A stretch of DNA of 64,000 bases from Thecamonas trahens ATCC 50062 (lineage: Eukaryota > Protista > Apusomonadida). The first letter of the stretch is position 1. Every line of letters starts with the position of its first letter. The notes below the pieces were generated by a model. The model was given only the letters and a program-made list of their open reading frames with translations. It was not told the DNA's origin and searched no databases. Below, in pieces: positions 56,189 through 60,334 of the stretch. The stretch spans positions 258,631 to 322,630 of the forward strand of contig NW_013657666.1 of NCBI RefSeq assembly GCF_000142905.1. The letters run 5' to 3'. A program made the position numbers and the translations under genes.

Positions 56189-56380
56189 GTTGAGAGCAGA
56201 GGAGGGGGGGGGGGGGGGGGGCAGTGTAGGAGACGAGTATGCCACTGTCCGGGGACTGGGGGGCCACACCTATGCCCACGCCCACGCCCACGTCTGTCAT
56301 GTCACACCAACGTGACCGCCATGCCACTCTCACCGCACACCACCCAGCATACCCTTGATCGATCGGGCGGTGATCGATCA

Positions 56381-56446
56381 GCCACCACCACCACCACCAC
56401 CACCACCACCACCACCACCACCACCACCACCACCACCACCACCACC
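56381..56446. repeat. (CCA)n trinucleotide microsatellite
   Basis: About 21 consecutive cca units. Confidence 0.95.
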
Positions 56447-56542
56447 CGTTGCCGCCTCACTCCACCTCCTTGCACCAACCTCCACCCCTCCTCCCCCACA
56501 CACCCACACCCACACACCCACACCCACACCCACACAAGCACC

Positions 56543-56791: not shown

Positions 56792-56980
56792 GTACGCCCC
56801 TTCCCCTTANNNNNNNNNNNNNNNNNNNNNNNNNNNNNNNNNNNNNNNNNNNNNNNNNNNNNNNNNNNNNNNNNNNNNNNNNNNNNNNNNNNNNNNNNNN
56901 NNNNNNNNNCCCCCCCCCCCCCCCCCACTACCCCCCCCCTTTCAATACCCCACCACACTGCCACCACCTCACCACACACC

Positions 56981-59900
56981 ATGTCATCACCTCCACCCCC
57001 CTCGCCATGGTGCCACCTCCCGGCGTGGTGCTCCACGGCGTGGCAGGCCCATTGGCGAGCCATCACCATGACTCTGGCCGTCGCCATTGTCCTCCTCTCC
57101 GGCACGGTCACCTTTGTCTACGTGGAGGAGCTGACGGCTGTCGATGCTGCCTACCTCACCACTGTCACCGTAACCACCATCGGCTTTGGCGACATCGTCC
57201 CCACCACAGATAACGGCAAGGGCGCAGTCGGGGTCTTTGTCCTCATAGGTGTCGGCCTCGTCGGCTACGCCCTCTCAACCATCTCGCAGATCTCAGGCAA
57301 CCGTGTCAAGGATCTGGTGGCAAAGCTCCACTCGAAGGGTCTCTCAGACCCTTACGTCGTCCTCGGCCCGGCCGATCGTGCATCGTCATCGTTCTGCGCC
57401 TCGCGCTGCCGCTGCTTTGTCTACTTTCCCTGCTGCGCCCCCGGTGGCGCCTGGTTCTACACCCCCGTGGCAAACGGACTCTCAACCCGAGCTGGCCTCA
57501 CCCGCCTGTCTGGTCGCTCCCGGGCGAATACTCGGCGTCGGGCACTCTGTTCTTTGAAGTCTACGACTGGGACGCAAACACCGTCGACGACCTCATCGGC
57601 TCGGTCCTAGTCCCCATCCCGCCGCACATTCTCCACGCCTCTCCGCCAGACGCCGAACGCCCGCACGACGCCCAGAGCCCATACTCGGACGCCTACACCG
57701 GCATCGGCCCCTCGTCGGCCTTCTCGTCTGCACAGGACGTTCCCATCGAGCCGCTCTCCCAGACCCCACCCGATGCCTGGTACCCGATCAACGTCCCGCT
57801 CACGCTCTCTGACGACGCCGCAGACATGTACCTTCGCGCTCCACCGCCGTCGGCGTCGACGACTTCGTCGTCGGTCTCTTCCGCATCGTCGGCGCTCGAC
57901 TCGGACACGACCGCGCTTGTGCCCAACCCGCGTCTCAAAATCGCCATTCGCCGCCACGGCGACGCCATCGAGGTCAAGGTTCTCTCCGCCTCGGGCCTCC
58001 CGGTCATGGACATGTCCATGATCGGCAACGCGCTCCGCCGTGCGCTCAACAAGGACCTGCTCGAGGTCATCCTCGCCTTTGCCGTTCTTGGCGTTCTTGT
58101 CGTCGGCGGCACCCTCGCCTTTGCCCACATCGAGGACTGGCGCCTGCTCGACGCTTTCTACTGGGCCGTCATCACCCTCTTCACCATCGGCTACGGTGAC
58201 ATTACACCTTCCACAAAGACCGGCCGCATCGTCTTTATCCCCTACGCGTTTCTTCTCCTCGGCTTTGGCGCCTACGCCCTCTCGCTGCTCATGGACAAGT
58301 CGCTCGGCCTCCTCACCAAGTATGCGCTCGTTGCTGCCGCATCAAGCCATGCCCGATGCTGCAACAACTCGGCAGTCCCGCGACACCCACTGCTGGGCCT
58401 CGCTCCGCCAGAAGCTCNNNNNNNNNNNNNNNNNNNNNNNNNNNNNNNNNNNNNNNNNNNNNNNNNNNNNNNNNNNNNNNNNNNNNNNNNNNNNNNNNNN
58501 NNNNNNNNNNNNNNNNNGAACTAATTCTCTCTCCCAGACCCCACCCGATGCCTGGTACCCGATCAACGTCCCGCTCACGCTCTCTGACGACGCCGCAGAC
58601 ATGTACCTTCGCGCTCCACCGCCGTCGGCGTCGACGACTTCGTCGTCGGTCTCTTCCGCATCGTCGGCGCTCGACTCGGACACGACCGCGCTTGTGCCCA
58701 ACCCGCGTCTCAAAATCGCCATTCGCCGCCACGGCGACGCCATCGAGGTCAAGGTTCTCTCCGCCTCGGGCCTCCCGGTCATGGACATGTCCATGATCGG
58801 CAACGCGCTCCGCCGTGCGCTCAACAAGGACCTGCTCGAGGTCATCCTCGCCTTTGCCGTTCTTGGCGTTCTTGTCGTCGGCGGCACCCTCGCCTTTGCC
58901 CACATCGAGGACTGGCGCCTGCTCGACGCTTTCTACTGGGCCGTCATCACCCTCTTCACCATCGGCTACGGTGACATTGCACCTGCCACAAAGACCGGCC
59001 GCATCGTCTTTATCCCCTACGCGTTTCTTCTCCTCGGCTTTGGCGCCTACGCCCTCTCGCTGCTCATGGACAAGTCGCTCGGCCTCCTCACCAAGTATGC
59101 GCTCGTTGCTGCCGCATCCAAGCCAATGCCCGATGCTGCCAACAACTCGGCAAGTCCCGCCGACACCCACTGCTGGGCCTCGCTCCGCCACAAGCTCCGT
59201 GCTTGTGTCACCACCCGCCAGGGCAAGTTCCAGGTCCAGCTTGTCATCGCCCTCGCCCTTACAGTTGCACTCATCCTTGTGGGCGGCCTCATCTCGCTCC
59301 AGGAGGGCTGGACCTATCTCGCCGGCGTCGCCTTTGCCCTCGAGACCGCATCGACACTTGGTCTCGGCACCCGCGTCCCGAAGACCGACGTCGGAAAGAT
59401 TCTCACCATGGCCTTTGCCCTCTTTGCCGTCGGCGTCCTCTTCTCCGTCATCTCGGTCGTCGCTCAGCTCTCGGTGGAGCGCTCGCTTGTCTTCAAGCGT
59501 GAGCTCCTCCGCCGTAAGGCCGAGGCCCATGAGCTCGAGGCCCAGCTTGTCGCCCAAGCCTCAGGCCACGTTCTCGCCATTGATGCCCCGCACAGCCAGC
59601 CATCCATTGCAGCGCTCGCACCCGGCCTCTCCGCCGAGAGCCTGGCCCGCCCATCCAAGTCGCGTTACGCGGCCACCCGTGACTGGGTCAAGACCTCCTT
59701 TGCCGCCCAGGTCTTCCTCGGCCTCGTCGGCTTCTTTGCCATCAACTGCGCCGCTGCCGGTGGCCTTCGCTACACCGAGCGCGGCATCATCACCCGCTAC
59801 CGCGACGCCATGTACGCTTCGCTCATCGTCTCGTCATCCACGGGCTACGGCGACATTGTGCCCAAGACCGAAGAGGGCTTTGTCATCATCTACGCCCTCC

Positions 59901-60334
59901 TCCTCATCGCCTACACACTGCTTGTTTGGATCATCGACGTTGCCGACCGTGCCACCAATGAGGCCGTAGGTAACGATGTTGACAACACTCTCCTCGACTC
60001 GTCCCAAGTCATTGTTGGCTCTGCACTTACCAAGCGCGCCCGCAATCACCTCTCTACCTCGTCATCGTCGTCGTCGTCATCATCGTCATCACTCGCTTCG
60101 GACGCCGCAGGCACCCGCTCCCGCGGTCGCACCCCTGCCTCCCACCCCAACAGCCGCGGTCGTGGCCGAGGCCGTGGTCGCGGCCGCGGTCGTGGCGCCC
60201 GCGCTCCTCGCAACGTTCCTCGCGCTTCTCACCCAGCCCAGCGCAACGCTGCTCGCGACCGTCCTCGACGCGCCCCCGGCCGCGCCCCGCCGTCCACTCG
60301 CGGACGGCGCCCGCGGCCGACCGGCCCTCACTAA
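56981..60334 (+). CDS. Potassium channel with four 2TM/pore units and an inserted C2 domain (frameshift at ~57473, artefactual duplication across gap)
   Basis: Filters TTIGFGD, FTIGYGD, STLGLGT and SSTGYGD, each flanked by TM helices; C2 motifs SDPYV, TLNPSW, FEVYDWD, DDLIG. Confidence 0.8.
57754..59197 (+). repeat. ~660-bp direct duplication (57754-58417 vs 58529-59197) flanking an N-gap, probably an unmerged contig overlap
   Basis: Near-identical copies; the first accumulates indels toward the gap. Confidence 0.9.

What the first reader, a model, noticed from the sequence alone, without database searches (positions are those of the whole stretch)
57338..58012. Circularly permuted C2 domain wired into the channel through its Ca2+-binding loop
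Seen (after adding one A at 57472-57474): GLSDPYVVL ... TPVAKRTLNPSW ... LFFEVYDWDANTVDDLIG ... WYPI ... LKIAI, and only then IEVKVLSASGLPVMD. Known: in canonical C2 domains the V.V..A..L...D strand comes immediately before G.SDPYV, and together they form Ca2+-binding loop 1. Here that loop is cut: its two Asp-bearing halves are the domain termini, joined to the inner helix of pore unit 1 and the outer helix of unit 2. The Ca2+-ligand aspartates appear retained. Inference: Ca2+ or lipid binding could pull directly on the gate, a possibly undescribed gating mechanism.
Basis: partly seen in the sequence, partly recalled or inferred. Interest (0 to 1): 0.8.

Follow-up and report, generated by a model that had tools for sequence, protein, structure and literature searches.

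The report
Permuted C2 domain inside K+ channel
A potassium channel of the protist Thecamonas trahens carries, between its first two pore units, a genuine calcium-type C2 domain whose chain begins and ends inside its own calcium-binding loop; this strand order has not been described for C2 domains, and it may let calcium or lipids act directly on the channel, though that is untested.

Summary
Window 56981-60334 (+) encodes a single-chain, four-pore K+ channel of Thecamonas trahens. A C2 domain lies between pore units 1 and 2 (57338-58011).

- **Frame break.** The window lacks one base at 57474/57475.
- **Strand order.** The order is c-d-e-f-g-h-a-b. The two strands that open a synaptotagmin-type C2 come last, so the chain ends lie inside Ca2+-binding loop 1.
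- **Ca2+ ligands.** All five ligand aspartates are invariant.
- **Conservation.** Four paralogues in this genome share the layout, as do relatives from marine metagenomes and metatranscriptomes.
- **Rotation test.** Moving the last strand to the front raises the score against a canonical C2 profile by 11-20 bits (z 7-14).
- **Structure.** AlphaFold gives a compact eight-strand domain (pLDDT 85, pTM 0.82). It matches solved C2 structures at Z about 10, with the templates' first strand and the model's last strand left unaligned.
- **Literature.** The papers searched describe only topologies I and II, and no K+ channel with a C2 domain.

Ca2+ gating is inference only. The scan has already reported the same feature on two paralogues in this genome. 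I rate it a new variant of a known kind.

The parts
56981..57337 (+). N terminus, pore unit 1 (outer helix, filter T-T-I-G-F-G-D, inner helix) and the helical linker that runs into the C2 domain
   Evidence: Pfam Ion_trans_2, 55 bits, residues 34-103 of the piece = 57080-57289. Translation. In the AF2 model of the paralogue the inner helix continues as one helix to 5 residues before the D-P-Y-V strand.
57338..57364 (+). Strand c of the permuted C2: G-L-S-D-P-Y-V-V-L, the second half of Ca2+-binding loop 1, carrying the second ligand Asp
   Evidence: The Asp is invariant. It aligns to G-T-S-D-P-Y-V of synaptotagmin-1.
57474..57475 (+). Frame break: one base is missing between these positions relative to an independent contig
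   Evidence: Alignment of the window with L009: GCAAA-CGG against GCAAAGCGG. The product P0001 is in frame.
57365..57552 (+). Cys-rich insert, then strands d and e with T-L-N-P-S-W
   Evidence: Pfam C2 begins here on the window piece, at profile position 43.
57553..57600 (+). Strands f and g with Ca2+-binding loop 3: D-W-D-x(4)-D-D-L-I-G, carrying three ligand Asp
   Evidence: These residues are invariant columns.
57601..57930 (+). Strand h (W-Y-P-I at 57778-57789) flanked by two low-complexity loop inserts that are specific to this paralogue
   Evidence: The alignment shows these inserts are absent from the compact paralogue L004.
57931..58011 (+). Displaced strands a (R-L-K-I-A-I-R-R) and b (I-E-V-K-V-L-S-A-S-G-L-P-V-M-D), ending in the first ligand Asp of loop 1
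   Evidence: Aligns to strands 1-2 of synaptotagmin-1 C2B. Rotation test: +18 bits, z 12.4. The equivalent strands in the models have pLDDT 85-98.
58012..58418 (+). Linker and pore unit 2, first copy, with a degraded 3' end that runs into the gap
   Evidence: Pfam Ion_trans_2, 59 bits, = 58087-58293. Five one-base deletions relative to the second copy.
58419..58518 (.). Assembly gap (N)
58529..59198 (+). Second copy of 57754-58418 (end of the C2 plus pore unit 2): an unmerged assembly overlap, not a real duplication
   Evidence: Ion_trans_2 at 58862-59068.
59264..59470 (+). Pore unit 3 (filter T-L-G-L-G-T)
   Evidence: Pfam Ion_trans_2, 42 bits. Translation.
59795..59926 (+). Pore unit 4 (filter S-T-G-Y-G-D). 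The gene ends with the stop codon at 60332-60334.
   Evidence: Pfam Ion_trans_2, 32.4 bits. Translation.

Best explanation
The segment is a translated, conserved, Ca2+-type C2 domain in a third circular permutation. It sits in the cytoplasmic link between the inner helix of pore unit 1 and the outer helix of pore unit 2 of a single-chain, four-pore K+ channel of Thecamonas trahens.

**Shown**
- The strand order is c-d-e-f-g-h-a-b.
- The chain ends are the two halves of Ca2+-binding loop 1.
- All five ligand aspartates are kept.
- The two connectors to the membrane helices keep a constant length, while the loops inside the domain vary freely.

**Inferred**
- The cut puts both chain ends at the membrane-facing, Ca2+- and lipid-binding tip. 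The domain can therefore sit in a short link between two membrane helices, with its tip under the inner leaflet next to the gate.
- Ca2+ binding, probably together with anionic lipid, would clamp the two halves of loop 1 to loop 3 and dock the tip in the membrane. That would move the extension of the inner helix, the segment before the outer helix, or both, and so change the open probability.
- The permutation could have arisen in one step, by capture of an off-register piece of a tandem C2 array.
For: **Frame and translation**
- An independent contig reads through the break.
- The five base substitutions between the two sequences are 4 synonymous and 1 non-synonymous.
- Relatives occur in Tara metatranscriptome assemblies.

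**Conservation of the layout**
- Four paralogues in the same genome have it. Two of them are uninterrupted open frames of 952 and 954 aa.
- Relatives from other organisms have it too: P0003, P0010, P0011 and P0021.
- Identity is only 31-59%. Even so, the D of D-P-Y-V, D-x-D-x(4)-D-D and the D of L-P-x-M-D are invariant.

**Homology of the displaced strands**
- The family profile aligns from strand 4 of synaptotagmin-1 C2A straight into strands 1-2 of C2B.
- Moving the last 18 residues to the front raises the score against a profile of 36 canonical C2 units by 11-20 bits in seven sequences. Against 200 shuffles of the moved strand, z is 7-14. For L004 the rotated sequence aligns as one end-to-end match.

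**Fold**
- The C2-only AF2 model has pLDDT 85.1, pTM 0.82 and eight strands. The two last strands have pLDDT 93-98.
- VIA-align gives Z 9-10, rmsd 2.5-2.9 Å and 100-107 aligned residues to solved C2 domains. The match covers model residues 4-122 against each template from after its first strand to its C terminus. Model strand 124-133 and the templates' first strand stay unaligned.
- Foldseek's sequential alignment of this confident model finds only C2 domains, but with TM 0.36-0.53 and rmsd 7-17 Å. That is what a permutation should give.

**Coupling geometry**
- The distance from the filter Asp to the D-P-Y-V Asp is 51-52 residues in six sequences. From the L-P-x-M-D Asp to the conserved Trp after the next outer helix it is 40-43. 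The domain itself ranges from 131 to 227 aa (sequences).
- The inner helix is modelled as continuous up to 5 residues before strand c.
Against: - No functional data exist. Ca2+ binding, lipid binding and gating are all inferred.
- I could not inspect model coordinates, so the exact position of the last strand in the sandwich rests on indirect evidence. The split-domain docking test was not available.
- The linkers have low pLDDT (44-58) in the three-part model.
- In Corallochytrium a C2 with the same order has a free N terminus. A two-sided pull is therefore not needed for whatever the module does.
- In the window assembly itself the gene is broken, so a strain-specific pseudogene cannot be fully excluded.
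Confidence: 0.7

Rival explanations
1. The permuted C2 is real but does not gate the channel. It serves as a membrane or lipid anchor, a targeting or clustering module, or a fixed structural plug. The cut in loop 1 is then only the geometric price of inserting a beta-sandwich into a short link between two membrane helices.
For: - Many C2 domains act in targeting rather than allostery (general knowledge).
- The Corallochytrium relative carries the module at a free N terminus.
- The linkers are modelled with low confidence.
Against: - All five Ca2+-ligand Asp are invariant across sequences of 31-59% identity.
- Both connectors keep their length to within 1-3 residues while the internal loops vary by almost 100 residues.
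- These proteins have no other Ca2+ sensor in Pfam.
Confidence: 0.2
2. The trailing strands are not part of the C2 fold. They would be a vestige of a second, lost C2 domain, or simply a linker, leaving a six-strand remnant.
For: - HMMER scores the tail only weakly on its own in native order: 0.5-3.7 bits.
- Model coordinates could not be inspected.
Against: - The strands have the highest pLDDT of the model (93-98), and the 145-residue domain has pTM 0.82.
- The Asp at the end of strand b is invariant.
- The rotation test gains 11-20 bits, and shuffled controls do not.
- A C2 without these two strands would lack an essential part of both sheets.
Confidence: 0.05
3. The feature is an artefact of a poor assembly (mis-join or duplication), or the gene is dead.
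For: - The window has a frame break at 57474/57475, N gaps, and a duplicated stretch across a gap.
Against: - The same order occurs in an independent contig, in two uninterrupted paralogues and in relatives from other organisms.
- The duplicated stretch begins after strand h and does not create the order.
- The assembly demonstrably drops single bases: five such deletions lie in the degraded copy.
Confidence: 0.03

Closest known systems
Ca2+-dependent C2 domains of topology I (synaptotagmin-1 C2A/C2B) and topology II (cPLA2, PKC epsilon, PLC delta1)
   Same: - Eight-strand beta-sandwich.
- Pfam PF00168 scores above its cut-off.
- Five ligand Asp in loops 1 and 3.
- Structural Z of 9-10 to solved C2 domains.
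   Different: - The chain starts at strand 3 of type I (strand 2 of type II). It ends with strands 1-2 of type I.
- The termini therefore lie inside Ca2+-binding loop 1, not at the edge of the sandwich.
- The papers read describe only two topologies.
K+ channels with a fused cytosolic Ca2+ sensor: MthK and BK (RCK domains after the inner helix), plant TPK1/KCO1 (C-terminal EF hands)
   Same: - A Ca2+-binding domain is covalently tied to a pore helix by a short linker.
- NCBI even names one paralogue 'calcium-activated outward-rectifying potassium ion channel', by similarity only.
   Different: - The sensor is a C2 domain, not RCK or EF hand.
- It sits between two pore units of the same chain and is tied at both ends.
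- No EF hand or RCK is found in these proteins.
- Ca2+ dependence is untested.
Tandem-pore K+ channels (K2P, TPK, TOK; Pfam Ion_trans_2)
   Same: - Pore units of two membrane helices and a pore loop, with T-x-G-Y/F-G-D filters, repeated in one chain.
- The models match TREK-2, TASK and NaK pores.
   Different: - There are four pore units in one chain instead of two, so the chain could form a pore on its own.
- A folded domain is inserted in the link between units 1 and 2.
Corallochytrium limacisporum Clim_evm22s156 (P0107)
   Same: - A C2 that starts at D-P-Y-V (Pfam profile from position 19).
- It ends in a strand and an Asp directly before an outer helix.
   Different: - The domain is at the free N terminus of a two-pore channel with C-terminal EF hands.
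- The signal of its last strand is weak: +2.6 bits, z 3.6.

Membership tests
C2 domain (Pfam PF00168, Ca2+-dependent membrane-binding type) | Sequence match to the family profile above the curated cut-off | tested here: met
   28.6 bits on the window piece (cut-off 22). 31.9-47.2 bits on five C2 segments.
C2 domain (Pfam PF00168, Ca2+-dependent membrane-binding type) | Eight-strand antiparallel beta-sandwich | tested here: met
   The AF2 model has eight strands, pLDDT 85.1 and pTM 0.82. Z is 9-10 and rmsd 2.5-2.9 Å to solved C2 domains. These are models, not a solved structure.
C2 domain (Pfam PF00168, Ca2+-dependent membrane-binding type) | Five acidic Ca2+ ligands in loops 1 and 3 | tested here: met
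   The Asp of L-P-x-M-D, the Asp of D-P-Y-V, D-x-D and the Asp before L-I-G are invariant. Their correspondence to synaptotagmin-1 is shown. Actual Ca2+ binding cannot be tested with these tools.
C2 domain (Pfam PF00168, Ca2+-dependent membrane-binding type) | Strand order of topology I or topology II | tested here: not met
   - All Pfam matches start at profile position 20 or later.
- The first strand of the canonical profile is found at the C-terminal end.
- The templates' first strand and the model's last strand are left unaligned.
Tandem-pore K+ channel (K2P/TPK type, Ion_trans_2) | Pore units of two helices and a pore loop, with a K+ filter motif | tested here: met
   There are four Ion_trans_2 matches. 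The filters are T-I-G-F-G-D, T-I-G-Y-G-D, T-L-G-L-G-T and T-G-Y-G-D.
Tandem-pore K+ channel (K2P/TPK type, Ion_trans_2) | Two pore units per chain, with the channel formed as a dimer | tested here: not met
   There are four units per chain in the window gene and in its paralogues. The oligomeric state is not testable here.
Ca2+-activated K+ channel | Open probability raised by cytosolic Ca2+ | not testable with these tools
   Only the NCBI name of paralogue P0002 suggests it, and that name was given by similarity.

The most novel reading that the evidence does not exclude
Ca2+, together with anionic lipid, binds a site whose ligands sit on the two chain ends of a split C2 loop. It thereby pulls directly on the inner helix of one pore unit and the outer helix of the next. 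That would be a way of gating K+ channels by Ca2+ distinct from the RCK, EF-hand and calmodulin mechanisms, and a natural precedent for inserting sensor domains by circular permutation.
Probability: 0.4. Interest if true: 0.8.

Novelty: new variant of a known kind. Interest (0 to 1): 0.62.

Why it matters
- **C2 domains.** They are among the commonest membrane-binding domains, and the literature I read describes exactly two strand orders. A third order, cut inside the Ca2+ site itself, shows that the fold tolerates opening at its functional loop.
- **K+ channels.** It would add a fourth kind of built-in Ca2+ sensor, wired at both ends between two pore units of one chain. That makes the coupling between sensor and gate unusually easy to dissect with ligand mutants and linker-length changes.
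- **Protein design.** It is a natural example of the strategy used for engineered sensors, in which a circularly permuted domain is inserted into a loop of the host protein.
- **Limits.** The family is small (apusomonads and a few marine relatives), and nothing about its function has been measured.

Tried and rejected
- **Canonical intron instead of a frameshift.** There is no AG in 57380-57470, so no GT-AG intron can bridge the frames. Rejected.
- **Real tandem duplication of pore unit 2.** Rejected. The two copies flank the N gap, and they differ only by two substitutions and by one-base deletions in the last 215 nt or so of the first copy.
- **First word search with the C-terminal 604 aa.** It found only P0001. 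Low-complexity words probably filled the candidate list.
- **Word search with the Corallochytrium protein.** It gave no further C2-bearing channels. P0166 covers the region but has no C2.
- **Rhodelphis marinus P0103.** It has a similar layout, but the rotation gain (+1.6 bits) is within the range of shuffles. It is not counted as a member.
- **Foldseek on the three-part model.** The result was uninformative: mixed pore and C2 hits with high rmsd.
- **ESM Atlas.** Its feature scores were below 0.9. Its own model of P0002 matches C2 clusters (TM 0.77 by row), which only confirms the fold.
- **Nalefski and Falke 1996.** The paper is not held. I cite it through two papers that quote it.
- **Literature searches.** I searched for a C2-bearing K+ channel, for 'topology III', and for Thecamonas K+ channels. 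Nothing relevant turned up. The library is incomplete, so this is weak evidence of absence.
Full report
**What is in the window.** The window is GC-rich (65%) eukaryotic DNA. It lies at G000:C14:258631-322630 of a 28.7 Mb assembly. Exact protein matches identify the organism as Thecamonas trahens ATCC 50062, an apusomonad flagellate.

From 56981 to 60334 on the + strand there is one gene for a K+ channel with four pore units. Pfam Ion_trans_2 matches lie at 57080-57289, at 58087-58293 (repeated at 58862-59068), at 59264-59470 and at 59795-59926. The finding concerns the stretch between units 1 and 2.

**Checking the observation.**
- In the frame of pore unit 1 the protein continues with a short linker and G-L-S-D-P-Y-V-V-L (57338-57364). 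It then runs on without further C2 motifs and stops at 57608-57610.
- A second frame, open from 57340, carries K-R-T-L-N-P-S-W, F-E-V-Y-D-W-D-A-N-T-V-D-D-L-I-G (57553-57600), W-Y-P-I (57778-57789), R-L-K-I-A-I-R-R (57931-57954) and I-E-V-K-V-L-S-A-S-G-L-P-V-M-D (57967-58011). It runs directly into the outer helix of pore unit 2.
- No AG lies between 57380 and 57470, so a canonical intron cannot join the frames.

**The frame break.**
- A word search returned P0001, a 381-aa product of an independent SPAdes contig (ENA ERZ505273 NODE_26373, locus L009). It reads from pore unit 1 through the whole C2 into pore unit 2 in one frame.
- The DNA alignment shows 99.5% identity and one extra G in that contig: GCAAAGCGG against GCAAA-CGG at 57474/57475. 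Of the five substitutions, four are synonymous.
- I never joined the two frames of the window. All later work used P0001, L009 or intact paralogues by reference.
- The assembly is prone to such errors. Window 57754-58418 is repeated at 58529-59198 on the two sides of an N gap. The first copy has five one-base deletions, all in its last 215 nt or so. This is an unmerged overlap, not a real duplication.
- Two paralogues have similar frame breaks. One lies in a t-t-t-c-c-c run, which a relative from another organism (P0011) reads through.

**The layout is a conserved family trait.**
- A six-frame search of the genome found four paralogues with the same order: pore 1, then D-P-Y-V ... L-N-P-x-W ... 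D-x-D-x(4)-D-D-x-I-G ... W ..., then a strand, then h-x-V-x-V-x-x-A-x-x-L-P-x-M-D, then pores 2, 3 and 4.
- Two of them are uninterrupted open frames of 952 and 954 aa: L005 = P0002 and L006 = P0008.
- A full HMMER search with a profile of pore 1, C2 and pore 2 against 1.84 billion representative proteins returned further members from other organisms. These are P0003 and P0010 (Tara Oceans metagenomes), P0011 (a Logan assembly) and the P0021 cluster (Tara metatranscriptome assemblies).
- Among the best 150 hits, the only proteins with both a C2 match and pore motifs were these, plus Corallochytrium limacisporum P0107 and Rhodelphis marinus P0103. P0035 was set aside: it is a 4045-aa protein with 15 C2 units and a single chance match to the loose pore pattern. 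The remaining hits were multi-C2 proteins or channels without a C2.
- Identity among members is only 31-59%. Even so, the Asp of D-P-Y-V, D-x-D-x(4)-D-D and the Asp of L-P-x-M-D are invariant.

**Is it a circular permutation?** Four lines of evidence agree.
1. **Pfam.** The C2 model matches every member above its cut-off, but only from profile position 20 or later. The first strand of the model is always missing at the N terminus.
2. **Alignment to tandem C2 domains.** A profile of the five C2 segments, searched against PDB sequences, aligns as one stretch (profile 44-162) to tandem synaptotagmin-1. The stretch runs from strand 4 of C2A through the linker into strands 1-2 of C2B. The family's D-P-Y-V start aligns to the G-T-S-D-P-Y-V that follows. 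A permuted domain should behave like this against a tandem repeat of the normal one.
3. **Rotation test.** I built a profile from 36 canonical C2 units cut from multi-C2 proteins. I then scored each channel C2 in native order, with its last 18 residues moved to the front, and with that strand shuffled 200 times. The sequences were built from files inside the script and only scored.
   - Rotation raised the score by 11-20 bits in all seven apusomonad-type sequences. For the window gene it rose from 37.3 to 55.5, with z 12.4. Overall z was 7-14.
   - The compact paralogue L004 then aligned end to end as a single match.
   - Corallochytrium gained only 2.6 bits (z 3.6). Rhodelphis gained nothing significant.
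4. **Structure.**
   - AlphaFold2 on the 145-aa C2 of L004, with nine aligned sequences, gave pLDDT 85.1, pTM 0.82 and eight strands. The two last strands were the most confident part, at pLDDT 93-98.
   - VIA-align gave Z 9-10, rmsd 2.5-2.9 Å and 100-107 aligned residues to solved C2 domains. The templates included cPLA2, PKC epsilon, PLC delta1, Munc13-1 C2B, E-Syt and Trichomonas C2.
   - The match always runs from model residues 4-122 to the template from after its first strand up to its C terminus. The template's first strand and model strand 124-133 are left over.
   - Foldseek, which forces one sequential alignment, found only C2 domains, but with TM 0.36-0.53 and rmsd 7-17 Å despite the confident model.
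   - In the three-part model of L005 the same two strands have pLDDT 85-91.

I could not inspect coordinates, and the docking test of core against tail was not available. The exact seat of the last strand is therefore strongly implied, not shown.

[quoted passage not shown] They bind Ca2+ through five acidic residues (PMC8507603; PMC10369986; both cite Nalefski and Falke 1996, which is not held).
- In type I numbering the channel domain runs 3-4-5-6-7-8-1-2. Relative to type II it is the same chain with the first strand moved to the end.
- The new termini fall between the first ligand Asp (end of strand 2) and the second (the Asp of D-P-Y-V), that is, inside Ca2+-binding loop 1.
Two strands, not one, trail. 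And permutation as such is not new for this fold; the cut point is.

**How it probably works (inference).**
- The link after an inner helix is cytoplasmic, so the domain faces the cytosol.
- Loops 1 and 3 form the membrane-docking tip of Ca2+-dependent C2 domains (general knowledge). With both chain ends in loop 1, the tip must point at the inner leaflet, right under the pore.
- The connectors look constrained. The distance from the filter Asp of unit 1 to the Asp of D-P-Y-V is 51-52 residues in six sequences. From the Asp of L-P-x-M-D to the conserved Trp after the next outer helix it is 40-43 residues. The domain itself ranges from 131 to 227 aa because of loop inserts (counted).
- The inner helix is modelled as one helix reaching to 5 residues before strand c, although with low confidence.
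- The most likely mechanism is that Ca2+, with anionic lipid, closes the split site and docks the tip, and that this displaces the inner-helix extension and the pre-outer-helix segment. I put about 0.4 on real Ca2+ gating of this kind.
- The Corallochytrium protein has a C2 with the same order at a free N terminus, in front of a two-pore channel with EF hands. This suggests that the join of the last strand to the outer helix is the older, conserved link.
- The main rival is a role as anchor or targeting module without gating.

**Origin (inference).** A piece taken off-register from a tandem C2 array, from strand 3 of one unit to strand 2 of the next, is already this domain. The alignments to synaptotagmin-1 and to multi-C2 proteins (best stretches ending at the L-P-x-M-D position) show this. 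One capture event could have created it.

**Novelty.** NCBI and UniProt annotate the paralogues as 'C2 domain-containing protein', 'potassium channel' or, by similarity, 'calcium-activated outward-rectifying potassium ion channel'. The genes are therefore public, but the names say nothing about the strand order. Full-text searches found no description of a K+ channel with a C2 domain, of a third C2 topology, or of these Thecamonas channels. The library is incomplete. The scan itself has already reported the same feature on two paralogues of this genome, with the same reading. My tests were done independently of those notes. I rate it a new variant of a known kind, with interest 0.62.

Noticed in passing
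window 57754-58418 and 58529-59198, gap 58419-58518: The end of the C2 and pore unit 2 appear twice, on either side of an N gap. The first copy differs by 2 substitutions and 5 one-base deletions, all near the gap. This is an unmerged assembly overlap with a low-quality contig end.
   Followed up: yes
window 57365-57460; same loop in L004, L005, L006, L010, L011: There is a Cys-rich insert in the loop after the D-P-Y-V strand in every family member. One Cys is invariant and most members have a C-C pair. It is modelled with low confidence. It could be a metal site or a lipidation site.
   Followed up: no
window 56981-60334: Four pore units lie in one polypeptide, so a single chain could form a whole pore. 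The scan noted this separately as s1-751770. Pore unit 3 has the unusual filter T-L-G-L-G-T.
   Followed up: partly
P0107 (Corallochytrium limacisporum Clim_evm22s156): A C2 with the same strand order, starting at D-P-Y-V, sits at the free N terminus of a two-pore channel with C-terminal EF hands. The signal of its last strand is weak (z 3.6). Rhodelphis marinus P0103 has a similar but degenerate layout that did not pass the rotation test.
   Followed up: partly
L004:1200-1260 and L003/L008: Two paralogues have one-base frame breaks in the assembly. One lies in a t-t-t-c-c-c run just before S-S-D-P-Y-V. L004 also has a short intron inside pore unit 1. The NCBI model P0017 starts downstream of the break and so lacks pore unit 1.
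   Followed up: partly
window 57601-57930: The window paralogue alone has two long low-complexity inserts (Pro/Ser/Ala-rich) in loops of the C2. They stretch the domain to 227 aa, against 131-136 aa in the compact members.
   Followed up: no
window 56190-56540 and 56810-56925: Upstream of the gene lie homopolymer runs (G and C), a long (CCA)n microsatellite, CACAC-type repeats and another N gap. The true 5' end of the gene is therefore uncertain.
   Followed up: no
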